Part shown: positions 4,390 to 52,403 of the stretch, piece by piece
Layout: each line of letters starts with the position of its first letter
How positions within the stretch are numbered: position 1 is the first letter of the stretch
Virus record (IMG/VR): IMGVR_UViG_3300020202_000061
Location: 1 to 64,000 of that record
Length of the DNA: 64,000 nt
Strand: one strand, 5' to 3'
Translations under genes and position numbers: made by a program
The notes under the pieces: model-generated
Database searches by the model: none
The model's input: the letters and a program-made list of their open reading frames with translations, nothing else
Told to the model about the DNA's origin: nothing

Positions 4390-4695
4390 TTAGGAAGTGC
4401 CCTGACGAATTAGTCGAAGACGAGCGGGTTTGACAATATTCCAAAACACCCACCACGTATCGTCCGGATCGGGAGGGTCCGTGGTATGATCCGGGTCCAA
4501 GCGCAGACCAGAGACATCTACCTCCCAGATGTCACCGGTTCCATGATTGGGGTCCAATTTGGTGGCCATATACACACCCCCAGCCCGACCCGGCACCAAG
4601 CCTCGACGACGAATCCGTGCACGATTTTCCGATGCCGTGTAGTGATACATCACCGATGGGTGATCAAAACCCTCTTTTAGATCAGTAAGTTTCAT
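4390..4695 (-). CDS. Small ADP-ribosyltransferase-fold (Tpt1/KptA-like) protein with MKLTDLKE leader
   Basis: Start reassigned to ATG 4695 (ATGA overlap with upstream stop); YHYT..RARIRRRGLVP..GVYM..IWEVDV..VKPARL. Confidence 0.55.
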   Translation of the reverse strand: MKLTDLKEGFDHPSVMYHYTASENRARIRRRGLVPGRAGGVYMATKLDPNHGTGDIWEVDVSGLRLDPDHTTDPPDPDDTWWVFWNIVKPARLRLIRQGTS

Positions 4696-5497: not shown

Positions 5498-5920
5498 TTA
5501 CTCTCCCCCGATCATAGCCGTCCGGAACTGAGCGAGGAATCGACGCAACAAACGGGGATCAGTGAAGGCAGCGTTCTTTCGAGGCTCTTTCTCGGTGCCG
5601 TATTCGAAATAGACGATCCGATTGAACGGGTTCTGGTCGAGGAACTCCATAGCCATCTGATGCAACTCCTTCAGGGCCGCTCGGGTTACTGTATCGGTCT
5701 GGAACTCCACACCCATTTCCTTGGTGTGCTGGAACACTCTGATCCAACCCCAACGATAGCCCATGGTGTAACTCCAATGTGGTTCTTGCTGGCCTGTGAG
5801 TTCACGAGCACGGTCACGGATCACTTCCCAATGAGCACCATCACGGAAATTACCGTCGTCCATGATCCAGCCAGCACGATTATAGATGTAGCCTTCTCTG
5901 AGAAGTTCGACCAACCTCAT
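5498..5920 (-). CDS. Putative internal head protein, single GWI-H-GWIR domain
   Basis: MRLVELLRE leader; AGWIMDDG..H..GWIRV. Confidence 0.7.
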   Translation of the reverse strand: MRLVELLREGYIYNRAGWIMDDGNFRDGAHWEVIRDRARELTGQQEPHWSYTMGYRWGWIRVFQHTKEMGVEFQTDTVTRAALKELHQMAMEFLDQNPFNRIVYFEYGTEKEPRKNAAFTDPRLLRRFLAQFRTAMIGGE

Positions 5921-7437
5921 CTGCGATGGCTCTCTGCCGCTTTCATCTTCGGACGTGGCACAAATTTACCGCCGATGTATTTCTGTGCATCCTCATCGAA
6001 TGTGTCGAGCCATTCGTTGTAGGCGTCGATCACCCTCTGACTGGGATTGTCAATCTGACGCATCAGCTTGGGATGGTTCTTGACCATGGTGATCAGGATA
6101 TCGTCGGGAATCTGATACTTGAAACGGGTCGAAGCCCTGAGGAGGTATTCGCCGCTCTTCGGAGCCGCAAGCTGCATCGCCTCACGAGTCGGGTGCGGGA
6201 TGTCCAGAATGGTCGAACCCACTCGGGACACTGCGAGCCTCTGGAGTTCCGGCGTCTGATCCTTGACGTGGGCAATCGTCCTGGGCACCCGCTGGACCGC
6301 AACTTTCATGGCCAGCGGGTCCTGATCCTTGATGACCTGAATCAGATCGGGATTCTCCTGTGCCACAAAGCGTTGAACCTCCGGACCCGGATTAACGATC
6401 TGACGGATACTCTCGGGATCAAGATGAACCGCATGCAACTTCAAGTCATCACTGATACCGGGGAACTTCTTGAGAATCTCGACCAGAGCCATGTTTCGAT
6501 GACCATAGCGGGGCTGCGGGGTCATATTCATGGCCAATTCAATCTCATCCTCGGTGGGATTCGAGATGTTAAAGAGGTTCCTCCAGTTCTTTCTGATACC
6601 GTTCTGCCTCATCTCCTCGCTGGGATTCTCGAACATCCAAAGTGCCCCATTGAGTTCGGCTTTCTTGGCGATTTCCGGAATCTTACTGAGCCAACGATAG
6701 TTGTGAGCGAGGCTGAACTTCTGTTGCTCCTCGGCGGGCTCTCCACGGATTGATTTGTACTTGGCCGGGAACGTCGGAATCTCCTTATCATTCTCGTCCA
6801 TGAACTGGTTGCTCTCGAAGTGCATCTGCACCTTTCGCCCGTTCGGGGTCAGGACGATGTAGAGCGGCCCATCTTTGTTGTAATCATTGAAGTGGTTCTG
6901 GCTCTCCGTAGATGCCGTACACCACTGGGTACCACGACCAAGATAGCAGGAGGCTTCCTCCGTGGTCGGCACATACACAGCGCCTTCCGGCCCCCTGTAG
7001 ACGACACGAACCTGCTCCTTCAACTTAGCATCGATCATGGCCTGAATCTGACGCTCACTCGTGGTGTCCACGAGTTCCATCGGCTTGATCACCTTCGTGT
7101 AGAGATCAATCGGTCCCTTGTAGCGGTTGATGTCGCGCTGTGCGGGTTCCAGCTTGGGCTTCAACGCATCGAATCGGCTCAGATAGCTCTTGGTTCGGTC
7201 GATATCCTCGACACGAAAGAGACCACCCAGATATGAACGGATCACCCACTGAGCATACTTTTTGTCCCCGGTCGGGTCCGTACTGATAATCACGTCGAAA
7301 AACGTCTCCGGATGCATGAACGTGCGACTGGGGGAATTACGCTCGTTCTGGACAGCGTGATCCCACAACGCCTGCTGGTAATTCCGGCGAAGGAAATCAA
7401 TGCGATTCTCTAACAGGAGGAATTCCAGTAATCTCAC
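5917..7437 (-). CDS. Putative internal head protein with GTQWCTA domain and C-terminal short helical repeats
   Basis: GTG start, MRLLEFLLLE leader; DPTGDKKYAQW, ASCYLGRGTQWCTA, QFMDEND; ~23 aa repeats (I.NP..E.Q..AV). Confidence 0.75.
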   Translation of the reverse strand: MRLLEFLLLENRIDFLRRNYQQALWDHAVQNERNSPSRTFMHPETFFDVIISTDPTGDKKYAQWVIRSYLGGLFRVEDIDRTKSYLSRFDALKPKLEPAQRDINRYKGPIDLYTKVIKPMELVDTTSERQIQAMIDAKLKEQVRVVYRGPEGAVYVPTTEEASCYLGRGTQWCTASTESQNHFNDYNKDGPLYIVLTPNGRKVQMHFESNQFMDENDKEIPTFPAKYKSIRGEPAEEQQKFSLAHNYRWLSKIPEIAKKAELNGALWMFENPSEEMRQNGIRKNWRNLFNISNPTEDEIELAMNMTPQPRYGHRNMALVEILKKFPGISDDLKLHAVHLDPESIRQIVNPGPEVQRFVAQENPDLIQVIKDQDPLAMKVAVQRVPRTIAHVKDQTPELQRLAVSRVGSTILDIPHPTREAMQLAAPKSGEYLLRASTRFKYQIPDDILITMVKNHPKLMRQIDNPSQRVIDAYNEWLDTFDEDAQKYIGGKFVPRPKMKAAESHRR

Positions 7438-7447
7438 GATAAGTCCC

Positions 7448-9097
7448 TCACATGACGTAATATTTACCCACAGACTGATTCAGGACTTTTTCGAACGCCT
7501 GTTCGAGTTGGTGCTCGAATCGAGCGATGAGTTTGGTGGTGAACTGTTCCGCACCCGGTCTCAGAGTGTGATCCCGGTCCAGACGACGTGGAAGCTGACG
7601 ATTCAGACGGACGCGGCCCGTCATCAGGTACTGGGTGAACCGCTCGTAGACCCACTCCGCATACTGCACGAGCTTTCCCTTACGGGCGGAGTTCATCCGC
7701 CCCAGCATGTGACCGAGGAGCTTCCCGTAGGCCCGGAAATAATCACGACGGAAAATCTCCCGATTCCAACCACTCACCTTGGGCCACTCCACCCCATAAG
7801 CACGCCGGGTTAAGCTCTCGACGAACTTATCGAACATCCCATGGATATTCGGCTCATAACCCTGAGTAAGGACGTGTGCGGTTCGGTGCGCCATCATCCA
7901 GGGCGACCGCATCGGCACATACGCCTCGTCCCGAAGGTTTCCGGTGTGAATGATGTTGATCCGGTTCCGCGCATTATTCAGGCGGGAGATTCTCTGGGCC
8001 ACATCCGGTCCCATACGCTCGCTGATCCAATCCAGCCGGACCTCACCCTTCTGGGTGTGCCAGTCATAGTCGGGATCAGGATTGGCCCAGAAATACAGAT
8101 TGAGGTTCTGTGGAATGCGGGCGAACTTCGTGGCGATCTTCCGGATCACTTCGGGATCACGAATCGCTTTCACATCCCTGTCCGAGAAGTGCTGTTTCTC
8201 ACGCTCGTAGCCGTGCCACTTCCGACGCTGCGTGGCCAGATTCTGTTCCAGATCGGGATCGACCTGGAAGTCACCGAGCGGGGCTTCGTTGAGCTTGGAC
8301 TTGAGCAGATCACGCACAAACGTATTCACGTCCACCTCGCGGTAGAACGATCTACTACCACCCTCGTACTCGTCAATGCGATAGACTTTCTTGGGCGAGT
8401 CCTTGATCAGGATGAGCATCCGGTAAATCGCGAGTCTCGTGACGTTGCGGATGGACCAACCAAAACCCAATCCATCGTCGGTCTCAACCACACGAATCCA
8501 CCCGCTCTTCAGGGCAAGACCACCAGCCATTCCATGCTCGTCCGGATTGTAATGCGGGAAATAGCCCTCCGCCTCTGCTTCATGATTCTCGAACCCGACC
8601 GGGATGAACTCACCTCGGTCAGTAATCCAATAACCATAGTCCGTACCGGGAATCTCAACGGCTTCGGTGATCACCCCACGATAACGCTGATTTAGCCAGC
8701 GCTGGGCCTGTCTGGGGTCGTCAAAGCGGCCCCAATCCTGACCGATCTGGAGCATGATCTTGTAGTCGAACCGATCCTTGATGATCTCGTAGACTTTACG
8801 AACCGCTTCACGGCTCGGTTCCAGACCGAGTTGGAACCCGATCTCACCACCCTCGGTGTAGACGCGGACCCACCCGTTACTGAACCCGTACAGGTAAAAG
8901 TCACTGTCCGGGACAAGATTCATCTTATTTTTGATGATATGAGGATCGCGTCCTTCCAGGTCCATATCGGAAACGATCTGATCGTAGAACGCCTCCTGCA
9001 TGATCTGGGTATGACCACCCTCGTGGTAGACCCCATCGGCGTCGATCCAGCCATAGTAGTAGAGATGAGATTCGAGGAGCAGGTCGATCAACTTCAT
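7448..9097 (-). CDS. Putative internal head polyprotein: 2x GWI-H-GWIR domain + HRxxH domain
   Basis: MKLIDLLLE leader (ATG 9097 or GTG 9100); modules linked by VITE and KLNE; PWMMAHRTAH. Confidence 0.75.
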   Translation of the reverse strand: MKLIDLLLESHLYYYGWIDADGVYHEGGHTQIMQEAFYDQIVSDMDLEGRDPHIIKNKMNLVPDSDFYLYGFSNGWVRVYTEGGEIGFQLGLEPSREAVRKVYEIIKDRFDYKIMLQIGQDWGRFDDPRQAQRWLNQRYRGVITEAVEIPGTDYGYWITDRGEFIPVGFENHEAEAEGYFPHYNPDEHGMAGGLALKSGWIRVVETDDGLGFGWSIRNVTRLAIYRMLILIKDSPKKVYRIDEYEGGSRSFYREVDVNTFVRDLLKSKLNEAPLGDFQVDPDLEQNLATQRRKWHGYEREKQHFSDRDVKAIRDPEVIRKIATKFARIPQNLNLYFWANPDPDYDWHTQKGEVRLDWISERMGPDVAQRISRLNNARNRINIIHTGNLRDEAYVPMRSPWMMAHRTAHVLTQGYEPNIHGMFDKFVESLTRRAYGVEWPKVSGWNREIFRRDYFRAYGKLLGHMLGRMNSARKGKLVQYAEWVYERFTQYLMTGRVRLNRQLPRRLDRDHTLRPGAEQFTTKLIARFEHQLEQAFEKVLNQSVGKYYVM

Positions 9098-10398
9098 CAC
9101 ATCACCATGATCTTGCCTACGGAACTCTCCATGAGATGGCCGAGTTCGTGATTGATGATCTTCTCGAACAGTTTGACGGAGCGGTTCAACTCCTGGACGC
9201 TACCCTCCAGGACGGCGTCGTCGTAGTGGTATTCCCCAGATTCATTCGGACGCCCCCAGGGGAGTTCCGAGGGGAGATTCGCGTTGAATACGGTTCGACC
9301 CAGCAGCATATACTGGGTGACGGCCTCCACCAGGAATTCACCGGGGTTGTTCAGGTTGCCATCGCGTGCGGCACGGGTGGTTCCCAGAACGTGGCAGATC
9401 GCCCGCACATAGGTGTTGCGGTACCAGGGACTGGCAAAGTCCTTCAGAGCCTCGGGATGTGCTTCCGCATCCAAATGATACTGCTTCAGGGTTTCCTCCA
9501 GGAACTCTCTGAACATCCCTGAAATTTTCCCACCCTGTGTGGTCATCAACAGGACGTGGGCGATACGGTGAGCGACCATCCAGGGCGAACGCAGGCTGAC
9601 AAATCCAACATCCGTCGCCAAGTTGTTCGCGATCACGATGGTGATCGACTGCTTCTGATCGGGCATCCGGAGGACACGACGAGCCGCGTCCGGACCGATA
9701 TGCAGACCGAGATTCCGAGGCCGTACCACACCCAGGAGAAGATTGCCGGGTCCACGCGTCTCCTCCGTGTTGGGATGACCCTCACTGGTCCAGAAATACA
9801 GATTGATCTTCTGTGGCACTTTAAGGAAGCGCCGCTCGATCTTCTTCAGCACGCCAGGATCATTCAGAGCCTTGACATCGACTGGTCGATAATCCGGGCG
9901 GAACTTCTCCTTCGGGCCGGTCCAGGTCTGCTGCTGGATCAGGTTGTTCGCGTTGAAATCGGGGTCTACCTGCATCGCATTGATCGGGGCCTCCGCCACC
10001 ATCCGAGTGGGACTCTTCATGAACTCGCGGATGAACGCGTTGGCCTTGCCGATGTCGGTGAAATCTCCATACCTGTCCTGCCCAGTGGTCCGTTCCGCAT
10101 CCACTCCGATCTCGTCCGGGTCCATCGTCCTGATGAGTTCGAGCACCGCATAGAGTGCACGATTCGTCACGGTCTCGATCAGGAAGTCGATCTCCAACCG
10201 GGTGTAACTCTGAACCACACGAACCCAACCCTTCCTCAGGGCCGCAACACGTCCCGCCACGGGCGAACCCTGGAAGCGGACGTTTGCCTCGTAATCGTGC
10301 TCCTGGAAGCCCACGTTGATGAACTCACCCTGATCGGTGATCCAGTAGCCGTAATCGGTCTCGGGGATGGCCCCCTCTAGGAGTTGGAGCAGTCTCAT
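9097..10398 (-). CDS. Putative internal head polyprotein: GWI-H-GWIR domain + HRxxH domain
   Basis: MRLLQLLE leader; YGYWITDQG..H..GWVRV; MVAE linker; PWMVAHRIAH. Confidence 0.75.
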   Translation of the reverse strand: MRLLQLLEGAIPETDYGYWITDQGEFINVGFQEHDYEANVRFQGSPVAGRVAALRKGWVRVVQSYTRLEIDFLIETVTNRALYAVLELIRTMDPDEIGVDAERTTGQDRYGDFTDIGKANAFIREFMKSPTRMVAEAPINAMQVDPDFNANNLIQQQTWTGPKEKFRPDYRPVDVKALNDPGVLKKIERRFLKVPQKINLYFWTSEGHPNTEETRGPGNLLLGVVRPRNLGLHIGPDAARRVLRMPDQKQSITIVIANNLATDVGFVSLRSPWMVAHRIAHVLLMTTQGGKISGMFREFLEETLKQYHLDAEAHPEALKDFASPWYRNTYVRAICHVLGTTRAARDGNLNNPGEFLVEAVTQYMLLGRTVFNANLPSELPWGRPNESGEYHYDDAVLEGSVQELNRSVKLFEKIINHELGHLMESSVGKIMVM

Positions 10399-11597
10399 AC
10401 GCGTGCCTCCGGCCGGAGCTTCATCAGGTCACGAACGAACGCGTTGGCCTCGGCCTCACCATCGAATCTATGCGTGGGCGGGGTAGCCCCGAGCAGATCA
10501 AAAGTGACGCGGATGGGTTCGGGCCAGGGGTCACTCTGCTTGATCAGTTTCAATACCCCATAGAGGGCAAGCTTCCGCACACTCCTTGGGTTCAGATCGA
10601 AGTCCAGATAGCGCGGTTCCGTCACGACCCTGATCCACCCCGCCTTGTAGGCGCGGACGATCCGATTCAGACCCTCACCCTTAGGGAAATACTGATCCGA
10701 GACGACCTGATGGAACTGACCGCGCACCGGAATGAATTTGCCCTCGGCGGTGATCCAGTAGCCGTAGGAGGTGAACGGGATTTCCTCCTCGGTGATCTGA
10801 CCCTTCAGGAGGGCGCGAATAGCCTGGGTGAGCTTCTGACGGGTCATTTCCCCACCCGCTTTTCCAGTCTCCAGATAGCAATTATTGGTCTCGGCGTTCT
10901 TGATTAGCGCTAGAAGACTTTTCAACGCGTCTTTTGTGGCGTATCTGGGATCGAGTTCGACATCAAATTCATGTCCGTTATCGATGACTCTGATCCACCC
11001 TGAACGCTTCGCCACACCTGTGCCATCCGTAAGCTTCTCCATAGGGATGCCAAAGGCTTTACGTGCGTCTCTTTCATGTTGTTCATGTGCGACTGCATGC
11101 ACCTTACCCTGCGCGTCGATCCAATACCCATACGGAGACCAATCGTGGTTTTCCGCCACCATCTGGGGTCGCCGCTTCCCGAGGAGGAAACGCATGAAAT
11201 ACTTGGTGAGTTCTTGCTTGGTCGGGTAGTGCCGACGCTTGAACTTGGGCTGGTCGTAGGCGAACCGCACATCGAACGCGATCTGGTTGTCGTCGTGAAT
11301 CTGATGGATGTAGGGGAGCACCGCACGCAGCGCCTCGGCCGTGCACGTCTTGGGATCGCGCACCGCGATGCTCACGCCGTTACGGTCGATGATCCTGATC
11401 CAGCCCAGACGGTATGCCTGTTCGTAACCGGTAATTCCGGGTGTGGTTATCTCCTCCGGATGCCTCTGAAAATACCTGTGAGCAACCATCGCATGGCTCT
11501 CGTAGGGCACCTCCAGATACTCACCATGATGGGTGATCCAGTAACCGTATTCGGTATCGGGGATGTTGGCCTCAATCAGGAGGTCGAGCAGTCTCAT
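10395..11597 (-). CDS. Putative internal head polyprotein: 3x GWI-H-GWIR domain
   Basis: Start reassigned to ATG 11597 (MRLLDLLIE, ATGA overlap); three YGYWI modules linked by MVAE and QITE. Confidence 0.75.
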   Translation of the reverse strand: MRLLDLLIEANIPDTEYGYWITHHGEYLEVPYESHAMVAHRYFQRHPEEITTPGITGYEQAYRLGWIRIIDRNGVSIAVRDPKTCTAEALRAVLPYIHQIHDDNQIAFDVRFAYDQPKFKRRHYPTKQELTKYFMRFLLGKRRPQMVAENHDWSPYGYWIDAQGKVHAVAHEQHERDARKAFGIPMEKLTDGTGVAKRSGWIRVIDNGHEFDVELDPRYATKDALKSLLALIKNAETNNCYLETGKAGGEMTRQKLTQAIRALLKGQITEEEIPFTSYGYWITAEGKFIPVRGQFHQVVSDQYFPKGEGLNRIVRAYKAGWIRVVTEPRYLDFDLNPRSVRKLALYGVLKLIKQSDPWPEPIRVTFDLLGATPPTHRFDGEAEANAFVRDLMKLRPEARV

Positions 11598-12910
11598 GCC
11601 GCTTTCCCCCTCTGACGGTTCGCCTTGTAGAGTTCCCGGAAATACTGATAGAGTTGGTTCTTGGTCGGGTAGCTTCCCCATGGGGGCAACTTGAAACCAC
11701 GTCCTATATCGAAAATGATCGTGTGGGGATCACGCCGATCATCCACCCCACGAATGAAGGGGAGGATTGCGCGGGCTGCGGCCGGTGCAACATCTCTGGG
11801 GTCCAGGATCGACACGTGCACGTAATCGTTGGGATCATTCGGGTCGATGATCCTGATCCAGCCCTTCTTGTAGGCGGTCTCGAACACCCCAAGCTCTCGG
11901 GTATTGCCCTCATGGGGATTCTGTTCGAACCACTGCTGCGCCGTCCAATGATGGGCCTCGTCGTCCACCTGGAGATACTCCCCGGTGTGGGTGATCCAGT
12001 AGCCATAGTAGGTGCCGGGGATATCCACGGCCTCCGCCACATTCCTGCGAGAGGTGGAGAAGAACAACTTCTTGAAAAACTGCATGACCTCGGCCTTCTC
12101 CGGTCGATGCGGCTTTGTGAAATTCAGACTCGTGTGCGGATCGTACACGTCCAGGTAGATCGTGGTGGCATCGGTCTGGGCGAGATAGCCCAGAACCGTA
12201 TTCAGGGCTTCGCGGGTGAGCTTCTTCGGGTCTTCCACGCTGATGTGGATGACGTGCTCCAGATTGCCTCCGGCACGAACCGTATACTTCTGCTGGTCCA
12301 CGATCCTGATCCAACCACGTTCATAAGCCGTGGTGATTGTGTGATCGTAGGTGAGGTGGCTGTAATCGATTCCTAGATGACGGGCCGCGACCGCACCATG
12401 AGCCTCAGCCGGAACCGGAATCATTCTGCCCCGGTCGGTGATCCAGTAGCCATAGTCGGTCTCGGGAATCTCCATCTCCATCAGGGTGGATTCCCTGACA
12501 ATCTGACGCCGCATCTGATTGAGCCAGCGTAGTGCCCGCCTAGCGTCTGGGAACTCGTCGTAGGTGTTGTTGAGTTGAATCCCGATTAGGCGACCGTCCA
12601 CGATGTCCTTGATCAGTCTCTTCATGCCCCGGAGCGCATTCTTGGTGGTGTTGCGACTGACCTCGAATGCCACCTCACGATTGGACGAACTCACCCTGAT
12701 CCAACCCGCTTTGAACGCGTATCCGTAGTGCTCGGCTTCGACCAAGTCGTATACCGACTGGCCCTTCTGGAGCGGCCCATGATCGCGCAGAATATCATCG
12801 GCGAAGTATTCGGACACGATTATCTCATGACTTCCCGATAGGAACTTGCCCTCGGACGTGATCCATCCGTAGATGGTTTGGGATTCGGTGAGGAAGTCGA
12901 GCAGTCTCAT
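11594..12910 (-). CDS. Putative internal head polyprotein: 3x GWI-H-GWIR domain
   Basis: MRLLDFLTE leader; three modules linked by IVRE/TLME and NVAE. Confidence 0.75.
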   Translation of the reverse strand: MRLLDFLTESQTIYGWITSEGKFLSGSHEIIVSEYFADDILRDHGPLQKGQSVYDLVEAEHYGYAFKAGWIRVSSSNREVAFEVSRNTTKNALRGMKRLIKDIVDGRLIGIQLNNTYDEFPDARRALRWLNQMRRQIVRESTLMEMEIPETDYGYWITDRGRMIPVPAEAHGAVAARHLGIDYSHLTYDHTITTAYERGWIRIVDQQKYTVRAGGNLEHVIHISVEDPKKLTREALNTVLGYLAQTDATTIYLDVYDPHTSLNFTKPHRPEKAEVMQFFKKLFFSTSRRNVAEAVDIPGTYYGYWITHTGEYLQVDDEAHHWTAQQWFEQNPHEGNTRELGVFETAYKKGWIRIIDPNDPNDYVHVSILDPRDVAPAAARAILPFIRGVDDRRDPHTIIFDIGRGFKLPPWGSYPTKNQLYQYFRELYKANRQRGKAA

Positions 12911-15033
12911 TGCCGATCCCTCACGAAAGCCACACCACGAATTCCGTTCCAGGCCCCGGACATCCGGTAACGACCATCATCCTTAAGGAGTTCGAAACGA
13001 TATCCCTGAGGGGTCCACCCCGCGTAGTTTTTCGCGTTGAATTCGTTGCGCTTGGCATCCTCCCCGTTGATCTCCAACACGGCGGGTTTCACGCGCTGGA
13101 TGAACTCCAGGGTGATTCGCTTGAGCATCTCCGTGATCTTCGGGAACAGTCCGGTCCCACCCTGGGGACGCTTCCCAATCACACGCCAGACCCTGAAATA
13201 ATGATCATCCGGATCGAACGGACCGCGCAGGAACCGGGCCTCAAAATCGTACGGACCGATCCGGAACTGAGCAGTGTTCTGGTCCTCCCAGTAGTAGCGA
13301 TCCTGAACGGGCTGATCCTCCAGCAGTCTGGGCTGATGATACCTGAAGAAGTAAATCCGATATTCCGGATAGGCACGACGCAACACCTTATGGACGTAAT
13401 CCAGACGGTGCTCGTCCATCGGGCGTCGATCATCCGGATCGCGAATGCTGATCATCTTTCGTCGATCATCAATACGACCCACGGCCAGGGCGTTCCCTGC
13501 CTCATCCGGATTGTGCATGGACCGGGACACACCCTGATCCTTCACGGTCTTCAATTTCCCACCCGGCATCACATAGAACATCAACCCACCCCTGTGATGA
13601 CCGATGTCGAAATAGTGGAGACGCTCGTCCTCCATGATCTGCCTGATCTCACTCGCGCCTTTTCCGAAGTACCAAATCTCATACTCCGGGTATTGCTGAC
13701 GAAGCTTCTTCGCGGCGAACTCGATGGTGCGCTCGGGCAGATCGAAGTAGGAGTTTCCCGGAGCCAATGGGGTGCGGATGCTGATCTTCTTTCGGAGATC
13801 ATCGATACGTCCCACCGCGAGGGTATTCTCCTCGATCTCGGGATTGTGGTTCATCAACCCATCACGCTCATCACTGACAGACTCGAAGTCTTCAGGGGTG
13901 GCACCGACCATCATGTAGCCGACATCATCGACGATGAGCTTTCCACCCTTCAGGAGGTACCAGAGTTTGGCCCCACGGTAGTGGCCGATCTCCTGGTAGT
14001 TATCCCAGGATTCGTGGATCACATCCCGCTGGGGATTGAACCCGCTCTGAATGGCCCGCTTGATCTGGTTCGGATAGAACGCGAGCCAGACAGTTTCAGA
14101 CCCACCTGAAGAATTGTTCTCTTCGAACATAACCCCATCGAAGCCCGCAGCTTTAATGGCCTGGACGAACCATTCGCCTTCCTTATCGTCGAAAAACTCC
14201 CAGGTGTTCTGGGGATTGCCAATGTAATTCTCCATCCAATCCATATCCACGCCTTGGGCGGCAAGCTTCTGGACATCCTTCCAATAGATGCCAGCCTCGT
14301 AAGTAATTCTCAATGGATTCTGGATGCTCAGATAGACCGGGATCACTCCACCCTTGCCACGATGTCTGGGTTGGTTCACAAATTCCCTGGCGAACGCTTC
14401 GTTCTCGGCGAAGTAAAATCCGTGGCGCTGCACCTCCACGGGAATACCCATGAACGTGGTGAATCCTTTACGATTCTCAAACTTATCGAAGAGCGGGCTC
14501 GGGGTGCCATGGAACACCACTAGGGGATTTCCCTGCTGGTCCACGACCTTGCTCTGCTTGAACCACGCACGAAATTGGGGGCTCTGGATAAGTGAAGGCT
14601 GTACATCTTCACGAAGGCTGCTCTTGAATTTTTCAAGCGCCTCATGACCGCGAATCTTCGAGATGATTTTGACCTGACGGGGATCGAACGCGACATACTC
14701 TTGCTGACCATTCGGATATTGGCCAATCATGCTGTCATACCCGGCCGCTTCCAATTCGTCACGGCGCTTCGGACTGACCGACTGGAACGTCTTGGCATCG
14801 GTCCGGTGATAGGGATTCTGAAATAGGAGTTCGGCCTGGATCACGATGGGCTCATCCCCATCGACTTCCGAATCCATCATAGCGTAATCCAACGCGTCCT
14901 TGAAGGACGGACTGAAATAGGCTCCCACGCCGAATGCTCCGCCTTGTCGGCGAAACTCATCCTTATCGATGGCCGTGCCATGATAGCCCACAAGCGGTGT
15001 GATGTTGGTTTCGAGCAGGTCTAGGAGCCTCAT
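12907..15033 (-). CDS. Polyvalent protein: 2x ADP-ribosyltransferase (ART-PolyVal-like) + 2x IGH domain + C-terminal domain
   Basis: MRLLDLLE leader; GYHGT..GVGAYFS..AGYDSM..EYVAFDPRQVK and FRAWFKQSKVVDQQGNPLVVFHGT..GFYFA..AGFDGV..AFYPNQIK; duplicated IGH..GGKL..HNP..LAVGRIDD..ISIR. Confidence 0.75.
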   Translation of the reverse strand: MRLLDLLETNITPLVGYHGTAIDKDEFRRQGGAFGVGAYFSPSFKDALDYAMMDSEVDGDEPIVIQAELLFQNPYHRTDAKTFQSVSPKRRDELEAAGYDSMIGQYPNGQQEYVAFDPRQVKIISKIRGHEALEKFKSSLREDVQPSLIQSPQFRAWFKQSKVVDQQGNPLVVFHGTPSPLFDKFENRKGFTTFMGIPVEVQRHGFYFAENEAFAREFVNQPRHRGKGGVIPVYLSIQNPLRITYEAGIYWKDVQKLAAQGVDMDWMENYIGNPQNTWEFFDDKEGEWFVQAIKAAGFDGVMFEENNSSGGSETVWLAFYPNQIKRAIQSGFNPQRDVIHESWDNYQEIGHYRGAKLWYLLKGGKLIVDDVGYMMVGATPEDFESVSDERDGLMNHNPEIEENTLAVGRIDDLRKKISIRTPLAPGNSYFDLPERTIEFAAKKLRQQYPEYEIWYFGKGASEIRQIMEDERLHYFDIGHHRGGLMFYVMPGGKLKTVKDQGVSRSMHNPDEAGNALAVGRIDDRRKMISIRDPDDRRPMDEHRLDYVHKVLRRAYPEYRIYFFRYHQPRLLEDQPVQDRYYWEDQNTAQFRIGPYDFEARFLRGPFDPDDHYFRVWRVIGKRPQGGTGLFPKITEMLKRITLEFIQRVKPAVLEINGEDAKRNEFNAKNYAGWTPQGYRFELLKDDGRYRMSGAWNGIRGVAFVRDRQ

Positions 15034-32499: not shown

Positions 32500-32506
32500 A
32501 ATGAAA

Positions 32507-32539
32507 ATGGGGAAGGCTAACGCGCGTTCCCTTCCCCAT
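32507..32539. terminator. Terminator hairpin between convergent genes
   Basis: ATGGGGAAGG-N13-CCTTCCCCAT with a T-tract on the minus strand. Confidence 0.65.
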
Positions 32540-32694
32540 CCATCCGAATCCTCTGGTCGGCGTCAAGCACAGGCACCACCGGCTTTCATGGGTCTCTGTT
32601 TATGGTACAGCGACAAAACCGAGTTGTTTCACGACGTTTGGGCAAGGCACATACCTGAACAACCCTACAACGACCTGCCTTCTCGTACCAACCT

Positions 32695-33585: not shown

Positions 33586-33829
33586 CTAACGCACCTCGCA
33601 GGGCCGCCAACGCGGCCTCCGGGCTTGCGTAGCTGCCAATCAGTTGGGGATCACGGAAGCTCATAAAGATCGACTCGCTGTTGTACCAGCGGACAATCCC
33701 ATGTCCTTCGAATCGACCATTGCCGGGATAACGCGGAAACCATCGGGTCCTCCTACGAGACCTGGGGACGAAGTTGTGATCCTGTTCGAGGAGCCTACCG
33801 ATCTCCTCGTAAAACTGTTTCTCTTCCAT
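33524..33829 (-). CDS. Hypothetical protein
   Basis: Start at ATG 33829; RRTRW..R.PGNGRF.G.G motif; TTGACA promoter upstream. Confidence 0.65.
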   Translation of the reverse strand: MEEKQFYEEIGRLLEQDHNFVPRSRRRTRWFPRYPGNGRFEGHGIVRWYNSESIFMSFRDPQLIGSYASPEAALAALRGALDATPRPEKEGVDSTPAISPG

Positions 33830-33886
33830 CCTCCAGGTATCTACACAAAAATCCTGGAATGTCAAGAGAATCCTTGGGATAAGTGA

Positions 33887-34594
33887 TTAGATGCTGAGTT
33901 CCTGATCGATGGCCCGACCATGACACTGGGTCAACTTGTCCAGATAACCGGTGTTGCGGAGAACCTTGAACGCAAGGTTCTCGACCCGTGATTCCCCGCC
34001 CTTGGCAAGTCCAGCCTGACGCATACCCCAGACCTTATCCTTGATCTTGTTGATGGCCTCGGGATTCCTGCACGGAGGCAAATTGTCGATTATGTGCACG
34101 ATATGAGCGACCTTCCTGCGAATGGCCGGTTCATTGATCTGGGGTTTCTGATAGGTCGGCTTCTTTAGCCAGTCATCACGAAGCAGGGAATACTCACCCT
34201 GGGTCACTGCGGGTTCCTTGGTGTCCTCCACGTAGAGTTCCACCGGGAAGCCGTGCACGGTGATGTCACGGGCATCGTTCCAGATACGCTTCTTCGATTG
34301 GATGTAGTCGTCAAGGAGTTCCGGGCAAAGTTCACGAAACTGGTCGAAATCCACGATCAGATGCAGATCAATATCCCGGAACTTTGTCCAGTTGAATCCG
34401 GCCGAGGAGCCGGTTACCACCACATCCTCCACGCGAAGGCCCGGAATCTTCAAGTAGGTCAGGAAGGCTTCGGCGATCCTCATCAGGGCCTCACGGACCT
34501 CCGGGCGCATCTCAAACCCCTGCCATACAGCGGGGTTCAGTTCTTCGTGGTACTGGATCGTGTCCAGGGGGTCTTGTAGCTCGTTGAGTCTCAT
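33887..34594 (-). CDS. Nucleotidyltransferase (pol beta-like), late, with MRLNEL leader
   Basis: VTGSSAGFNW..DIDLHLIVD, VELYVED, RQAGL..GGE.RVENLAFKVLR; TAAATA at 34601. Confidence 0.8.
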   Translation of the reverse strand: MRLNELQDPLDTIQYHEELNPAVWQGFEMRPEVREALMRIAEAFLTYLKIPGLRVEDVVVTGSSAGFNWTKFRDIDLHLIVDFDQFRELCPELLDDYIQSKKRIWNDARDITVHGFPVELYVEDTKEPAVTQGEYSLLRDDWLKKPTYQKPQINEPAIRRKVAHIVHIIDNLPPCRNPEAINKIKDKVWGMRQAGLAKGGESRVENLAFKVLRNTGYLDKLTQCHGRAIDQELSI

Positions 34595-34599
34595 GAATT

Positions 34600-36537
34600 T
34601 TATTTAGCCCATGCCATGTAATCACTGAAAGCTCGAAACTTCTGTTGAGCTTCCTGGGGGTTGTTCACGTAGAGTGCTTGGAGATATTCCCAGATCAGAT
34701 CGAAGATCACTTTTGGTTTCACCTGGAGCTTACTCTCCTGATAGGCGTCATGAAGATCACTAGAAACTGCCGCTAGAATCTGATCGATTTTGCGTGCTCC
34801 GAAGAACTGTTGGATCATGGTCAGGGCGATTCCGGACTTCCTGGTGTATTGGTCGATCTGCGGGATGATCGGTTTGATCTTCTCACGATATGCAATGTAG
34901 TTCCGGAGCATCTTGTAGGTCTCCGGATATACGCGAAGAGTGTTTAGCAGACCCTGGAGAATCGGCTCTGGCATCTTATCATAATTGGTTACGACCGGTT
35001 CCAGGGCATGGGCTGGATTGTTGTCGATGTCTTTGATCTTCTTCATAACAATCTGAATTCCAGCCTGAGTGAGCTTCTTCCGGAATTGCTTGTCCGCGTT
35101 CATTCCAAACCGGAGCAATCCGATGATGGCCCGCACCGCATATTTGTTGACCCAATACCCGGAGGACCGAAGCACATTCAGGATGCGTTGCTGAATCCAT
35201 CCGGGTAGACGAGAGATCACCTGCTTCTCATCACGAGTGAATTCCTCACCCCAGCGATCCTGTTCCACATCTTGTTCTGGTCGGATCAGATTGAAAATCT
35301 TCTTCATGTAGGTATCGACATGAAGGTCCGGCGATGCACCTAAAATCACGGCGAAGCAGAACTGGAACAGGGTGCGTTTGATCTCGTCAAAACGACGCTC
35401 ATACTTGTCGTTGCCCCAGACACGAAACTCGATACGACCCTGGTGATCGCGAAATCCACTGATATTGAAGGTGCTGTATTTCTCAGCCTCTTGCGTGAAC
35501 ATGTCACGCATGGGCTGAACCAGCTTGGTAAACCCATCCTGACGAATGATCCGGGCAATGGCCCGGCTCGATTCACCACCGATCTTGGCTATCTGGTCCC
35601 GGAAATACTGACGAATTCGATCCAGAGGAGTCTGCGTGTAAGTGGATTTGCGACGGTCGAAATCCGAGAGCACACGTTCGTCACCCATGAACAGTGCAAC
35701 CTTGAACCAATCGATGTCCTCAAGCTGTTTGGGTTGTTTGAAACTGACCCGAATATGCAGGCCGGTATTGCTGTTGGTGTAGCCAGTTCGATCAATGAAC
35801 CGAAACATCTTCTCCAACCACTCCAGACCCTCTTGCATGTCCATCGCCGGAGATGAAATCTCAGCACCGCCTCGTGGATTATCCGAATCGTCAACCGTGC
35901 TATCAGCCATGACACGCCACACCGCACTTTGATGTCCGGGAATCTTCGCGTATTCACGTTCCTGATAAAGTTTAACTCCAAACTGTTCTTGGAAATCCTG
36001 AGCGAGCTTCCCGAAGATTTCACGTTGAGGTGGAAACACAGTGATATAATGACCATCCTCATCCTGCTGCACCGCATGCCTGAACGAGTAGCGGAAGTTA
36101 TTCAGGACCCATTCCGATCCTTTGATCCTCAACAAGGCGTGGGAAAGACCCATCATGTCGAGCCTATCCAGAATCAACATCAGATAAGGAAGATCACGAG
36201 CCCTCTCACCCCGCTTGATATTACCGAGCATATCCAGGTTGATTGGTTGCAAACCCAGGTTCTGATGAGAATTGTATTCCTGAACGAACTGATCCCAGTT
36301 ATGGATCAGGGAACGAGCGACCTCAAGCAGGGCAGACCCACCCTTCAACTCAATCAGGTCGAGGAGTTTGTCCCAATCCTTCAACCGAACTCGCTTGAAC
36401 CGGTAATGATTCGCACCACGCTCGTAATAGAACTCGACCTCGAAACCCATGCGGAACCAAGCCAGGATATTCGTGACATCCTTCCGGCTTAATTTGGCTC
36501 CCTCATAGAGCGGGGCAAGAAATTCGACAAGACGCAT
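34600..36537 (-). CDS. Putative amidoligase (COOH-NH2 ligase) domain protein, late, with MRLVEFLAPLYE leader
   Basis: MGFEVEF, WRVMADSTV, GAEISSP, TNSNTGLHI, KYSTFN, IEFRVWG; TAAATA at 36560. Confidence 0.75.
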   Translation of the reverse strand: MRLVEFLAPLYEGAKLSRKDVTNILAWFRMGFEVEFYYERGANHYRFKRVRLKDWDKLLDLIELKGGSALLEVARSLIHNWDQFVQEYNSHQNLGLQPINLDMLGNIKRGERARDLPYLMLILDRLDMMGLSHALLRIKGSEWVLNNFRYSFRHAVQQDEDGHYITVFPPQREIFGKLAQDFQEQFGVKLYQEREYAKIPGHQSAVWRVMADSTVDDSDNPRGGAEISSPAMDMQEGLEWLEKMFRFIDRTGYTNSNTGLHIRVSFKQPKQLEDIDWFKVALFMGDERVLSDFDRRKSTYTQTPLDRIRQYFRDQIAKIGGESSRAIARIIRQDGFTKLVQPMRDMFTQEAEKYSTFNISGFRDHQGRIEFRVWGNDKYERRFDEIKRTLFQFCFAVILGASPDLHVDTYMKKIFNLIRPEQDVEQDRWGEEFTRDEKQVISRLPGWIQQRILNVLRSSGYWVNKYAVRAIIGLLRFGMNADKQFRKKLTQAGIQIVMKKIKDIDNNPAHALEPVVTNYDKMPEPILQGLLNTLRVYPETYKMLRNYIAYREKIKPIIPQIDQYTRKSGIALTMIQQFFGARKIDQILAAVSSDLHDAYQESKLQVKPKVIFDLIWEYLQALYVNNPQEAQQKFRAFSDYMAWAK

Positions 36538-36598
36538 GGAATTATCCTGGTTGACCCGGTATTTAGGTCAGCCCGACCATGCTGGATTGTAAAATTTA

Positions 36599-37273
36599 TC
36601 AGAGTTTTTGGACTTCGATTCCTACGCGGATTTCTGCCCACACATCGGGATGAATCACATTCGACGTGAGCATGTCCTGGAGGAAATCACCGGAGGGTTT
36701 TTCCGGTTCCTCATCCCCAAAGATACAGCGGATCATCTTCTTGTAGCGCTCGCCCAAGAGCTTTCGATTCATCGCGTTGATGGTGGGATCAACCCCGTTC
36801 AGAACCAGCAAGAGGCGAGCCTCGCGATTGATGTAGGCCACCCGTGTGAATGCACGGGGGATGATCTCCCCCAGATGGCTGCATGTCCCCAGGGCGTCCA
36901 GAGATTCCTGCCAACCAAATCCGGCCAGGGTCAGATCGATAAGACGATCCCTGAAAAACCGAGTGCGCTGCTCACGAGTCAGATTGGGCATGGCCGCAAT
37001 CTTCTGTTCAGCCGCATCCTCGTCCGCAAACAGACTCAGGGGATGTAACTTGAGGCGGTCGATCTCAATGATTGCGAGACGACCATCGGCGGGGAACAAC
37101 GTGGCATTCCCAGCGAAGTGCAGAGCAAAGGCCGAATCCGTCAAGTAAACGCCTCGGGTGTTACTCTCCACCGTATGGGCGTAGTTGCCCTTGCGGACGC
37201 CCCTCGGCTTCAACCCGGCGTAGACCGCTTTCTCAGCCACACGCTCACAAGTTCCGTGATACAGAAAGTTCAT
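36599..37273 (-). CDS. ADP-ribosyltransferase-fold protein
   Basis: LYHGT..GLKPRG..GVYLTD..FA..IIEID..DED. Confidence 0.55.
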   Translation of the reverse strand: MNFLYHGTCERVAEKAVYAGLKPRGVRKGNYAHTVESNTRGVYLTDSAFALHFAGNATLFPADGRLAIIEIDRLKLHPLSLFADEDAAEQKIAAMPNLTREQRTRFFRDRLIDLTLAGFGWQESLDALGTCSHLGEIIPRAFTRVAYINREARLLLVLNGVDPTINAMNRKLLGERYKKMIRCIFGDEEPEKPSGDFLQDMLTSNVIHPDVWAEIRVGIEVQKL

Positions 37274-37279
37274 CGGGTC

Positions 37280-37342
37280 AATCTAACAGACCCGTTCATC
37301 CCGGTCAAGGTCTTTGACATTTCCAGGGGTTTCTGTTATATC
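37280..37342. promoter_or_regulatory. Back-to-back sigma70-type promoters
   Basis: Minus: TTGACC-N17-TAGATT (37308-37280). Plus: TTGACA-N17-TATATC (37314-37342). Confidence 0.7.
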
Positions 37343-37370
37343 TTCGGGATTCGTCACCCGGAGTCCGGTC

Positions 37371-38066: not shown

Positions 38067-38096
38067 GGGGCGGGTCACGCCCGCCCCTCCTGGGTT

Positions 38097-51373: not shown

Positions 51374-52387
51374 TCAGATCGTGACGATAGTCGCACCCTC
51401 CAGGTGTTCGAGAATCGAATGGAATGCCTTGTTCAAGTCATCCTCTATCTGTTTGACCATTTTTGAGATTTTCGTAATCCAACGTTTGTTTGACAATGCC
51501 ACCTGCAACGTCTTGGGTACGTTCTGACCCCAGAAACCCGAGCTTCTCGCGCGGGTCATCCAAGTTTCCGGACCCTGTAAGGTGACACGACCCTGAATAA
51601 TAAACTGAGCCATGCATTCGATCAGGAATTCCGAATCCTGCAATGTCCCATCTCGGGCCGAACGAAATCCGCCCATAAGCTTCTGAACCATCCCTTTCCA
51701 GTAAAGCGGACTGGTATAGTTGCGGTCTAATGGATCGATGAGCTTACCCAGGGTGTCTTGAACACCACGACTTGAAGCGATTCGGACAAGTTCAGCAACG
51801 ATCTTCGAAGTCATCTGATTGGCACCGGCCACATCATTTTCCTGGTTGATGCTATCGTGGGCGAACTCACCCTGGGAGACTGCATCAAAAATACCATGGG
51901 CAATGCGATGGGCGACGATCCACGGAGTCATCGGAATCTTACTCGGACCAGGATTGGCATTCCGTTTGAAAATCATCCGGATTGCTTTGGGCCGAGACGG
52001 AATCAGACCGAACTCATTGTATTTGCCATGCTCGGTCCAGAACACATTGGGTACCGTGTTGAGTAGCTGAGAAAACTCGTTCTCCATATGCTCGACTGGA
52101 TTCTTTGGTGCATCTGGATCATAAGGGTTCTCTTTATAAGAGAAATCATCACCCTGATCGTATTCACCCTCCAACCCATCCAAATTGGAATCCCGATTAT
52201 CCATGTAGATGTCGAAGATAAAGGGAGTGCGCCGAAACGCACGGCCGAGCTTCTCCACATAGCTGGGTTGCTTCATCATCTTCATTTCGGGCGCACGAAA
52301 CCGGACGGGTTCGTCGTTGAATCCCTGAAGATGGAAGTTTCCGAGTGGGGTCTCGAAAAGCGGATTTGTTAAATCTTTCAAGCGCAT
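51374..52387 (-). CDS. Stand-alone HRxxH-domain protein, late, with MRLKDL..LFE leader
   Basis: Start reassigned to ATG 52387, 5 nt after TAAATA; TPLGNF, MTPWIVAHRIAH, SARDG..EFLIECMAQF..GRV; homologous to the C-domains of the 7448 and 9097 genes. Confidence 0.75.
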   Translation of the reverse strand: MRLKDLTNPLFETPLGNFHLQGFNDEPVRFRAPEMKMMKQPSYVEKLGRAFRRTPFIFDIYMDNRDSNLDGLEGEYDQGDDFSYKENPYDPDAPKNPVEHMENEFSQLLNTVPNVFWTEHGKYNEFGLIPSRPKAIRMIFKRNANPGPSKIPMTPWIVAHRIAHGIFDAVSQGEFAHDSINQENDVAGANQMTSKIVAELVRIASSRGVQDTLGKLIDPLDRNYTSPLYWKGMVQKLMGGFRSARDGTLQDSEFLIECMAQFIIQGRVTLQGPETWMTRARSSGFWGQNVPKTLQVALSNKRWITKISKMVKQIEDDLNKAFHSILEHLEGATIVTI

Positions 52388-52403
52388 GCCCATATTTAGG
52401 GCA

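What the first reader, a model, noticed from the sequence alone, without database searches (positions are those of the whole stretch)
33887..36537. Enzymes outside the array carry the same leader and their own late promoters
Seen: the nucleotidyltransferase starts MRLNEL and the amidoligase-like protein MRLVEFLAPLYE, each with TAAATA upstream. The HRxxH gene at 51374 (MRLKDL..LFE) has both features too, and the small ART at 4390 (MKLTDLKE) has the leader. The first three do not use ATGA overlaps, so the M-R start is not a coupling artefact. Inference: the injected payload includes nucleotidylating, peptide-ligating and ADP-ribosylating enzymes that could modify host targets before phage transcription starts.
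Basis: inference. Interest (0 to 1): 0.62.

Follow-up and report, generated by a model that had tools for sequence, protein, structure and literature searches.

The report
Capsid-targeting leader on phage enzymes
About nineteen unrelated proteins of an uncultivated soil jumbo phage, including a nucleotidyltransferase and an amidoligase, start with the same short peptide, which most likely directs them into the phage head for delivery with the DNA, so the packaged cargo can be predicted from sequence.

Summary
The window is the first 64 kb of a 347.5-kb soil-metagenome jumbo myovirus with a T4-type capsid protein, S77 prohead protease and gp55-like late sigma factor.

- **Leader.** The nucleotidyltransferase (33887-34594, minus strand) and the amidoligase (34600-36537, minus) start MRLNEL and MRLVEFLAPLYE. 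M[RK]Lx[ED][LF] begins 14 genes where 0.14 are expected, about 19 with looser matching. Carriers fall into at least 11 unrelated families. In 17 of 19 an L-x-E, the T4 prohead-protease cleavage motif, ends at residue 8-12.
- **Promoter.** TAAATA lies just upstream of both genes and nowhere else in 6.5 kb. Genome-wide it sits in front of structural genes.
- **Relatives.** Distant amidoligase homologues keep an equivalent leader. In the cultured relative Atu_ph07, all four annotated genes with this leader, and the amidoligase homologue gp196, are in the published virion proteome.

Best reading: a variant of the T4 capsid-targeting sequence that loads enzymes into the prohead.

Cleavage, ejection and host modification are inferred, not shown. 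The "small ART" and the "HRxxH" enzyme labels are unconfirmed. An early-type promoter upstream could also transcribe both genes. I rate this a new variant of a known kind.

The parts
33887..34594 (-). Nucleotidyltransferase gene (235 aa): Pol-beta-type NTase domain followed by a C-terminal three-helix bundle
   Evidence: ORF. phrog_36119, E 1.7e-55. Pfam NTP_transf_2 16.7 bits, below the 21-bit cut-off. G62, D74, D76 and E119 are invariant in 43 homologues. AF2 pLDDT 88. Best fold matches are minimal NTases, CD-NTases and aminoglycoside adenylyltransferases, all weak (Foldseek E >= 0.004, Z 5.5-7).
34559..34594 (-). NTase leader MRLNELQDPLDT. It has L-N-E at residues 3-5 but P-L-D where paralogous leaders have P-L-[YF]-E
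   Evidence: First 10 residues have pLDDT 56. 65 of 120 family members start M[RK]xx[DE][LFI], and 14 lack the extension.
34601..34606 (-). TAAATA 6 nt upstream of the NTase ATG, overlapping the amidoligase stop codon
   Evidence: Conserved in the 409-kb relative.
34600..36537 (-). Amidoligase gene (645 aa): glutamine-synthetase-like Amidoligase_2 core (about 28-420) with a helical insert (about 45-170) and a C-terminal helical region
   Evidence: PF12224, 31.5 bits against a 22-bit cut-off. Invariant G31 F32 E33 E35, E226, H261, R295, E370, R372. Top Foldseek rows are glutamine synthetases at weak E (0.02-0.1) on a model of pLDDT 66.
36502..36537 (-). Amidoligase leader MRLVEFLAPLYE, ending in L-Y-E before Gly13
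   Evidence: Homologues at 23-69% identity keep equivalent leaders: MRLIEFLEPLYEG, MKLFEVMQPVLEL, MKIFEILTE...TLFEG. Residues 1-10 have pLDDT 43.
36538..36569 (-). Conserved upstream region holding TAAATA (36560-36565) 22 nt before the amidoligase ATG
   Evidence: These 32 nt are identical in the relative contig, whose protein is only 69% identical.
51374..52387 (-). Leader-bearing protein MRLKDLTNPLFE|TPLGNF with a domain of unknown function carrying an AHRxxH motif. TAAATA at 52393-52398, 5 nt upstream
   Evidence: No Pfam or PHROG family. The domain is shared with 344975-345838 and with the C-terminal halves of 7448-9097 and 9097-10398.
4390..4695 (-). 101-aa protein MKLTDLKE... with a YHYT motif just after the leader. 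ATGA-coupled to the gp15-like gene
   Evidence: It aligns over a YH[GY]T...GLxP module with the N-termini of 12907-15033, 157755-160940 and 36599-37273. ART identity is not confirmed.
5498..15033 (-). Array of seven leader-bearing genes (starts at 5920, 7437, 9097, 10398, 11597, 12910, 15033), downstream of neck genes and upstream of the gp15-like and sheath genes
   Evidence: ART-PolyVal PF18760, E 2.5e-37, in 12907-15033. Partial paralogy among members.
36599..37308 (-). Context: leaderless-peptide YHGT gene (36599-37273) with a sigma-70-like promoter TTGACC-17-TAGATT (37280-37308) upstream. No predicted terminator before the amidoligase
   Evidence: The promoter is conserved in the relative.

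Best explanation
The N-terminal peptide M-[RK]-L-x-[ED]-[LF] followed by L-x-E at residue 8-12 is a capsid-targeting propeptide, a variant of the T4 internal-protein capsid-targeting sequence (CTS).

Proposed steps:
1. The NTase, the amidoligase and about 17 other proteins are made late from TAAATA promoters read by host RNA polymerase with the phage gp55-like sigma factor. The other carriers include ART-PolyVal, NUDIX, GNAT, DnaJ-like and AHRxxH-domain proteins.
2. The leader docks them onto the scaffolding core while the prohead assembles.
3. The S77 (T4 gp21-type) prohead protease cuts after the Glu of L-x-E and frees the mature enzymes inside the head.
4. The enzymes leave with the DNA at infection.

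Shown here: the shared leader, the protease, the L-x-E-rich scaffold-position protein, the late-type motif, and virion presence of leader proteins in a cultured relative.

Inferred: docking, cleavage, ejection, and any action on host molecules.
For: - Leader enrichment: 14 observed against 0.14 expected; 19 against 5 by DNA pattern.
- Carriers belong to at least 11 families with no similarity beyond the leader. Their domains are those typical of injected polyvalent proteins: ART, GNAT, NTase, NUDIX (PMC5512222).
- 17 of 19 leaders have L-x-E ending at residue 8-12, against 47 of 443 genes overall. T4 gp21 cuts after L/I-x-E, and the 10-residue T4 CTS is sufficient for packaging (PMC9026906).
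- T4 ipII and ipIII start MKTYQEFIAE|A, the same type of peptide.
- The genome encodes an S77 protease. The protein in the scaffold position has 19 [LI]xE against 3.9 expected, P = 3e-8. There is a gp23-type capsid protein and a gp55-like sigma factor.
- In the AHRxxH paralogues, the leader|domain junction (PLFE|TPLGNF) aligns with an internal LNE|APLGDF junction in the multidomain array proteins.
- The amidoligase leader persists in homologues down to 23% identity. Atu_ph07 gp196 and RsoM2USA_26 have ...LTELKM and ...LSELKM N-termini and ATAAATA upstream.
- Atu_ph07 gp196 is in purified virions: 14 peptides, 30% coverage.
- The four annotated Atu_ph07 genes that start M[RK]Lx[ED][LF] are gp043, gp199, gp561 and gp672. 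Three read MRLIDLLE.... All four are in the virion proteome, where 131 of 714 proteins are (chance about 0.001).
- Atu_ph07 gp199 sits just downstream of the portal gene, where T4 has the prohead-core gene 67 (the T4 gene order is from my own knowledge).
- The leaders are low-confidence, detached segments in both AF2 models.
Against: - There are no proteomic or expression data for this uncultivated phage. No RNA runs hold it.
- The Atu_ph07 proteome does not separate head from tail, and gives no N-terminal peptides. gp199 rests on a single peptide.
- The NTase and the 163692-164234 protein have L-x-E only at residues 3-5.
- The NTase and amidoligase lie among RNA-repair-like and early-looking genes, downstream of a sigma-70-like promoter with no predicted terminator.
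- M[RK]xx[DE][LF] is common across the whole NTase family (65 of 120), so for that protein it could be a family feature.
- The leader differs in register from the T4 CTS, so homology is not established.
Confidence: 0.65

Rival explanations
1. The leader targets proteins to the virion, but to a site other than the head interior (neck, tail, baseplate or whiskers), or to an ejection complex, and works without protease cleavage.
For: The array lies between neck genes and the gp15-like and sheath genes. A second leader cluster follows a GH108 lysozyme gene. The Atu_ph07 proteome is of the whole virion.
Against: L-x-E at a fixed distance fits the specificity of a head protease. Atu_ph07 gp199 sits directly downstream of the portal gene, the position of prohead-core gene 67 in T4 (my own knowledge). 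The cargo is soluble enzymes rather than structural folds.
Confidence: 0.12
2. The NTase and amidoligase act inside the infected cell late in infection, for example in RNA repair, nucleic-acid modification or modification of phage proteins. The N-terminal peptide would then be a family or translation feature and not a packaging signal. Virion detection of gp196 would be adventitious.
For: The neighbours are RlaP, an RNA ligase and a YHGT protein. An RlaP-like NTase also lies next to the amidoligase homologue in Atu_ph07. Most NTase family members carry M[RK]xx[DE][LF]. PEG-purified virion proteomes do contain contaminants; RecA-like, SSB and ribonucleotide reductase proteins are listed in Atu_ph07.
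Against: The same peptide heads at least 11 unrelated families in one genome. Fourteen NTase homologues lack the extension altogether. gp196 has 14 peptides and 30% coverage, far above the contaminant-like entries with 1-3 peptides. Codon diversity argues against an mRNA-level feature.
Confidence: 0.13
3. The shared N-terminus is a by-product of gene duplication and N-terminal recombination within a hyperplastic region, or a translation-initiation adaptation of late mRNAs (some apparently leaderless), with no targeting role.
For: Eleven of the 19 leader genes are tightly coupled to the preceding gene (most by an ATGA overlap), which forces an A after ATG. Several leader genes have TAAATA only 5-6 nt from the ATG.
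Against: CGT, CGC and CGA Arg codons occur in uncoupled genes. Major late structural proteins (capsid, sheath, gp15-like) lack the peptide. The peptide is conserved between this phage and Atu_ph07, although their sheath proteins are only about 39% identical. It is tied to virion presence in Atu_ph07.
Confidence: 0.05

Closest known systems
[quoted passage not shown]
   Same: A short N-terminal peptide shared by otherwise unrelated proteins. It starts M-[KR] followed by a hydrophobic/acidic pattern and ends in L/I-x-E for the gp21-type prohead protease. T4 ipII and ipIII read MKTYQEFIAE|A (PMC9026906; PMC3012670). This phage encodes S77 protease, gp23-type capsid and gp55-type sigma homologues.
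   Different: The sequence and register differ: M[RK]Lx[ED][LF] with E at 8-12, against MKT[YF]xEF with E at 10 or 19. There are about 19 carriers rather than three small basic proteins. Most carriers are large enzymes of 235-1061 aa, and many sit in an operon array. Nothing has been tested experimentally here.
T4 Alt ADP-ribosyltransferase
   Same: A late-made enzyme packaged in the head, trimmed by gp21 (7-residue N-terminal propeptide) and injected with the DNA to modify host proteins (PMC9026906; PMC5512222). This phage has leader-bearing ART-PolyVal and YHGT proteins.
   Different: The ARTs here belong to the polyvalent-protein clade and not to the Alt/Mod family. The NTase and amidoligase have no T4 counterpart.
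Polyvalent proteins of phages and conjugative elements (Iyer et al. 2017)
   Same: The same repertoire of effector domains (ART, GNAT, Pol-beta NTase, NUDIX), predicted to be packaged and injected (PMC5512222; PMC7824862).
   Different: Here the domains are mostly in separate genes, each with its own leader, not fused in one giant polypeptide. Amidoligase is not mentioned anywhere in that paper's text (0 occurrences).
Ejection and inner-body proteins of phiKZ-like phages (phiKZ, 201phi2-1, SPN3US)
   Same: Many head-internal proteins with propeptides removed after Glu by a diverged gp21-like protease (PMC9026906).
   Different: Their motif is S/A-x-E, with no common N-terminal leader reported. 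The phage lineage is different, and this genome has a T4-type capsid protein.
Atu_ph07 virion proteins gp043, gp199, gp561, gp672 and gp196
   Same: The same leader (MRLIDLLE..., MKLTELFNPLTE...) and an amidoligase homologue, all detected in virions by ESI-MS/MS (PMC6102473 Table S5).
   Different: The published paper lists them as hypothetical proteins and does not point out the leader. A full-text search for these leader peptide strings found no paper that prints them.

Membership tests
T4-type capsid-targeting sequence system | One short N-terminal peptide shared by proteins that are otherwise unrelated | tested here: met
   14 strict and about 19 loose carriers against 0.14 expected. At least 11 families with no similarity beyond residue 14.
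T4-type capsid-targeting sequence system | The peptide ends in the prohead-protease motif L/I-x-E | tested here: met
   17 of 19 have L-x-E ending at residue 8-12. The NTase and 163692-164234 have it only at residues 3-5.
T4-type capsid-targeting sequence system | The phage encodes a gp21-type protease and a cleavable scaffolding core | tested here: met
   PF03420, 81 bits, and phrog_207, E 1e-45. The adjacent 354-aa protein has 19 [LI]xE, P = 3e-8. Its scaffold identity rests on position only.
T4-type capsid-targeting sequence system | Carriers are present in heads and the peptide is removed | not testable with these tools
   Indirect only: Atu_ph07 proteins with this leader, and gp196, are in whole-virion MS. 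No N-terminal peptide data.
T4-type capsid-targeting sequence system | The peptide is sufficient to package a foreign protein | not testable with these tools
   Needs a fusion experiment in a cultured relative.
T4-type late promoter with gp55 | An A/T-rich -10-like element (T4: TATAAATA) placed just upstream of late genes, plus a gp55 sigma factor | tested here: met
   The core is TAAATA, preceded by C or G and not by TA. 63 of 108 copies are intergenic, and 61 lie within 60 nt of same-strand starts, including capsid, sheath and gp15-like genes. gp55-like protein: phrog_234, E 4.5e-30. Transcription start sites not tested.
Pol-beta superfamily nucleotidyltransferase | G[SG] then D-x-D and a third acidic residue on the NTase fold | tested here: met
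   G62-S63, D74-I-D76 and E119; G62, D74, D76 and E119 are invariant in 43 sequences. Fold matches to MNT, CD-NTase and ANT enzymes are weak. The Pfam score is below the cut-off. The subfamily and substrate remain open.
Amidoligase_2 (PF12224, glutamine-synthetase-like) | Pfam score above the gathering cut-off and conserved acidic, His and Arg residues | tested here: met
   31.5 against 22 bits. Invariant E33, E35, E226, H261, R295, E370, R372. Glutamine synthetases head the Foldseek list at weak E.
ADP-ribosyltransferase (for the 101-aa protein 4390-4695) | Recognisable ART domain with a catalytic H-Y-E or R-S-E triad | tested here: inconclusive
   No Pfam or PHROG hit. Only a YH[GY]T...GLxP module is shared with three other proteins, one of which has a sub-threshold PARP hit.
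Polyvalent proteins | Two to fifteen effector domains in one polypeptide | tested here: not met
   The NTase and amidoligase are single-enzyme proteins. Only some array and cluster members are multidomain.

The most novel reading that the evidence does not exclude
MRLxDLLE-type leaders are a portable head-loading and ejection signal conserved across a clade of soil and plant-associated jumbo T4-related phages (this phage, its 409-kb relative, Atu_ph07, probably RsoM2USA). If so, the whole injected enzyme set can be read from sequence. That set would include a previously unrecognised injected pair, a Pol-beta NTase and a glutamine-synthetase-like amidoligase, which covalently modify host macromolecules within seconds of infection.
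Probability: 0.3. Interest if true: 0.8.

Novelty: new variant of a known kind. Interest (0 to 1): 0.62.

Why it matters
T4's capsid-targeting sequence is the only well-studied signal that loads arbitrary proteins into a phage head. It is already used to engineer protein-delivering particles.

A second, different leader with at least a dozen natural enzyme cargoes would have three uses:
1. It would give a sequence rule for predicting packaged, and probably injected, proteins in uncultivated jumbo phages.
2. It would nominate new classes of first-seconds host-takeover enzymes (NTase, amidoligase, NUDIX, GNAT, ART) for biochemical study.
3. It would give Atu_ph07, a cultivable Agrobacterium phage, a ready test system and possibly a new packaging tag.

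It also suggests that the giant polyvalent proteins of other phages and these separately tagged enzymes are two solutions to the same delivery problem.

Tried and rejected
- **Nucleotide search.** Searching the two genes against 50,697 phage records found nothing.
- **IMG/VR scans.** Single-protein scans for close relatives of either protein found none. A 69%-identical relative came only from the protein word search and its contig. That contig could not be searched whole.
- **PDB sequence searches.** Profiles of both families gave nothing significant.
- **Fold searches.** Both gave only weak matches. I use them as consistent with the Pfam and motif calls, not as proof.
- **Complex prediction.** Prohead protease with amidoligase residues 1-40 returned 'no answer' (score 0.02). 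This is no evidence either way.
- **Sequencing runs.** Only two soil DNA runs hold the region and no RNA run does, so I did not lay reads.
- **Other proteomes.** RsoM2USA lists only ten gel bands. XacN1 is given only in a figure. Neither could be cross-checked.
- **Array proteins.** Array protein 7448-9097 has no match among cultured phages, and the ART-PolyVal protein 12907-15033 matches only partly (at most 46% of its length).
- **Iyer 2009.** The amidoligase paper is not held.
- **Rejected matches.** The ORF at 46970-47194 (MKLIELILMF...) fits the pattern but is hydrophobic and overlaps a better gene on the other strand. I did not count MKISMLREAQ (333659) or the RlaP start MLLHDL, because the acidic residue is not kept in the relative.
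Full report
**What the window is.** The window is the first 64 kb of a 347,504-bp IMG/VR virus record (about 90% complete) from soil metagenomes. It is a jumbo myovirus distantly related to T4.
- It has a gp23-type capsid protein at 64790-66028.
- It has an S77/gp21-type prohead protease at 67165-67794.
- It has a sheath at 1945-4308 and a gp15-like protein at 4692-5489.
- It has a gp55-like late sigma factor near 89.4 kb.
- The sheath is 38-41% identical to those of PA5oct, Atu_ph07 and related jumbo phages.

**The observation.** Both genes are on the minus strand. The 235-aa nucleotidyltransferase (NTase, 33887-34594) starts MRLNELQDPLDT. The 645-aa amidoligase (34600-36537) starts MRLVEFLAPLYE.

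TAAATA lies 6 nt upstream of the NTase ATG (34601-34606, overlapping the amidoligase stop) and 22 nt upstream of the amidoligase ATG (36560-36565). These are the only two copies on either strand in 32000-38500. The gene at 51374 really starts at 52387 (MRLKDLTNPLFE), with TAAATA 5 nt upstream. The 101-aa gene 4390-4695 starts MKLTDLKE and is ATGA-coupled to the gp15-like gene.

**Is it more than chance?**
- I called 443 genes with a simple codon-usage caller.
- M[RK]Lx[ED][LF] starts 14 genes, against 0.14 expected from the internal frequency of the same motif.
- As a DNA pattern it occurs 19 times, against 5 for the reversed control.
- Allowing one deviation gives about 19 carriers. Eleven are in the window (4390, the seven array genes 5498-15033, the NTase, the amidoligase, 51374). 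Eight are elsewhere (154568, 156865, 157755, 163692, 194403, 286265, 344253, 344975).
- Position 2 uses seven different Arg/Lys codons and position 3 uses five Leu codons, so the constraint is on the peptide.
- Without the first 14 residues, the NTase, the amidoligase and several others have no detectable similarity to any other carrier. At least 11 unrelated families are involved.

**What the carriers are.**
- NTase: G-S...D-x-D...E motif invariant in 43 homologues, AF2 pLDDT 88, weak fold matches to minimal NTases, CD-NTases and aminoglycoside adenylyltransferases.
- Amidoligase_2: above the Pfam cut-off, with conserved Glu, His and Arg residues. Glutamine synthetases are the best, weak, fold matches.
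- ART-PolyVal (12907-15033), NUDIX (154568), a DnaJ-like protein (156865), and a 1061-aa protein with a C-terminal GNAT and an N-terminal YHGT module (157755).
- A domain with an AHRxxH motif and no known family.

ART, GNAT, Pol-beta NTase and NUDIX are the domain types described in injected polyvalent proteins (PMC5512222).

**Link to the head protease.** In 17 of 19 leaders an L-x-E ends at residue 8-12, against 47 of 443 genes overall.

T4 gp21 cuts after L/I-x-E. The 10-residue T4 CTS is enough for packaging: residues 4 and 7 matter for targeting, and residues 8 and 10 for processing (PMC9026906). The T4 record gives MKTYQEFIAE|A for ipII and ipIII, and MKTFKEF...ITE|A for ipI.

In this phage:
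- The protein between protease and capsid genes has 19 [LI]xE, against 3.9 expected (P = 3e-8).
- The protease itself starts with two L-T-E sites.
- In the AHRxxH paralogues, the leader|domain junction (PLFE|TPLGNF, PLYE|APIGDF) aligns with an internal LNE|APLGDF junction in two multidomain array proteins. This is what one would expect if L-x-E marks cuts between modules.

**TAAATA as a late element.** The hexamer is not over-represented overall (108 against 96 expected). However, 63 copies are intergenic, where composition-matched hexamers reach 6-40. Sixty-one copies lie within 60 nt upstream of a same-strand start, including capsid, sheath, gp15-like and very large structural genes. The context is usually C/G-TAAATA-C/T.

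Eight of 19 leader genes have TAAATA within 60 nt upstream, against 59 of 444 genes (P = 0.0014). The rest are internal to operons. Spacing falls into two classes: 5-6 nt to the ATG, and 15-30 nt.

**Relatives.**
- A 409-kb JGI contig is syntenic: HSP20, RNA ligase, YHGT, amidoligase, NTase, RlaP. Its amidoligase is 69% identical, yet the 32 nt before the ATG, TAAATA included, are identical.
- Amidoligase homologues at 23-35% identity keep equivalent leaders.
- Atu_ph07 gp196 and RsoM2USA_26 have ...LTELKM and ...LSELKM N-termini and ATAAATA upstream.
- The NTase family is large (339 hits). Of the 120 listed, 65 start M[RK]xx[DE][LFI], against a background of 0.009 per position. Fourteen start directly at the conserved core, so the extension is optional for the fold.

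**Experimental anchor.** The Atu_ph07 virion proteome lists 131 of 714 proteins (PMC6102473, Table S5).
- It contains gp196 with 14 peptides and 30% coverage.
- A complete DNA-pattern scan of Atu_ph07 found four annotated genes that start with the strict leader:

| Gene | N-terminus |
|---|---|
| gp043 | MRLIDLLESS |
| gp199 | MKLTELFNPLTES |
| gp561 | MRLIDLLEDI |
| gp672 | MRLIDLLEHT |

- All four are in the proteome. gp561 has 7 peptides. gp199 has only one.
- Molecular weights confirm that the paper's gene numbers match the record's.
- The chance of four out of four is about 0.001.
- gp199 lies just downstream of the portal gene. From my own knowledge of the T4 gene order, that is where T4 has the prohead-core gene 67.
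- Atu_ph07 also has a gp21 homologue, gp204.
- The leader pattern is enriched in this phage, Atu_ph07 (14 against 4) and RsoM2USA (17 against 4). It is not enriched in PA5oct, T4, Cr30 or Molly.
- No held paper mentions these peptides.

**Weak points.**
- Nothing is known about expression or particle content of this phage itself.
- The Atu_ph07 proteome is of PEG-purified whole virions and includes some likely contaminants.
- A sigma-70-like promoter (37308-37280) precedes the YHGT gene, with no predicted terminator before the amidoligase. The intergenic RNA folds only modestly (z = -2.6).
- The NTase has P-L-D where its relatives have P-L-[YF]-E. In T4, Asp at the cleavage position blocks processing but not targeting, so the NTase may be packaged uncut or cut at L-N-E5.
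- ART status of the 101-aa protein is unproven.

**Verdict.** It is unproven for ejection and host modification.

This is a new variant of the T4 capsid-targeting principle. It has a different leader, many enzyme cargoes, and a ready experimental system in Atu_ph07.

Noticed in passing
window 4692-5489, 33887-34594, 42433-42873, 51374-52387; genome 148652, 190409, 194403, 216919, 286265, 308485, 327385: At least 11 genes have TAAATA exactly 5-6 nt before the ATG with no Shine-Dalgarno sequence. If TAAATA is a T4-type -10-like element, these late mRNAs would be leaderless or nearly so. A second class has 15-30 nt with a GGAG-like site.
   Followed up: partly
window 7448-9097 and 9097-10398 (internal), against 51374-52387 and genome 344975-345838 (N-terminal): The AHRxxH domain is preceded by LNE|APLGDF or VAE|APINAM inside the array proteins, and by the leader junction PLFE|TPLGNF or PLYE|APIGDF in the short paralogues. 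This suggests internal protease sites that would split multidomain proteins.
   Followed up: partly
window 32695-33585, 36599-37273, 37314-38066, 38097-38636: An RNA-repair-like neighbourhood: RlaP-type NTase, a YHGT protein with a sigma-70-like promoter, an RNA ligase and HSP20. It is syntenic in the 409-kb relative. An RlaP-like NTase also sits next to the amidoligase homologue in Atu_ph07.
   Followed up: partly
Atu_ph07 NC_042013 315526 (minus strand): An unannotated start reading MRLFDLFEKH overlaps the end of gp429. It is a possible missed or mis-started leader-bearing gene.
   Followed up: no
genome 286663-286710 (minus strand): A GC-rich hairpin (cccctgaag...cttcagggg) is followed immediately by cTAAATAtttccATG of a leader gene (MRLLALLEDN). 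This looks like a terminator-promoter junction.
   Followed up: no
genome 67797-68603 (minus strand; L001 1974-2780): A 268-aa protein between the portal and protease genes has an extremely acidic, Asp/Gly/Met-rich C-terminal half and no PHROG family. It may be a prohead-core component.
   Followed up: no
window 46970-47194 (plus strand): This ORF matches the leader pattern (MKLIELILMF...) but is hydrophobic and overlaps a better-scoring gene on the other strand. It is probably a chance match.
   Followed up: no
Synechococcus phage S-CRM01 NC_015569: The leader DNA pattern occurs 10 times against 1 for the control. One match is gene g122, three genes from the NTase homologue g125. A related leader may exist in some T4-like cyanophages.
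   Followed up: no
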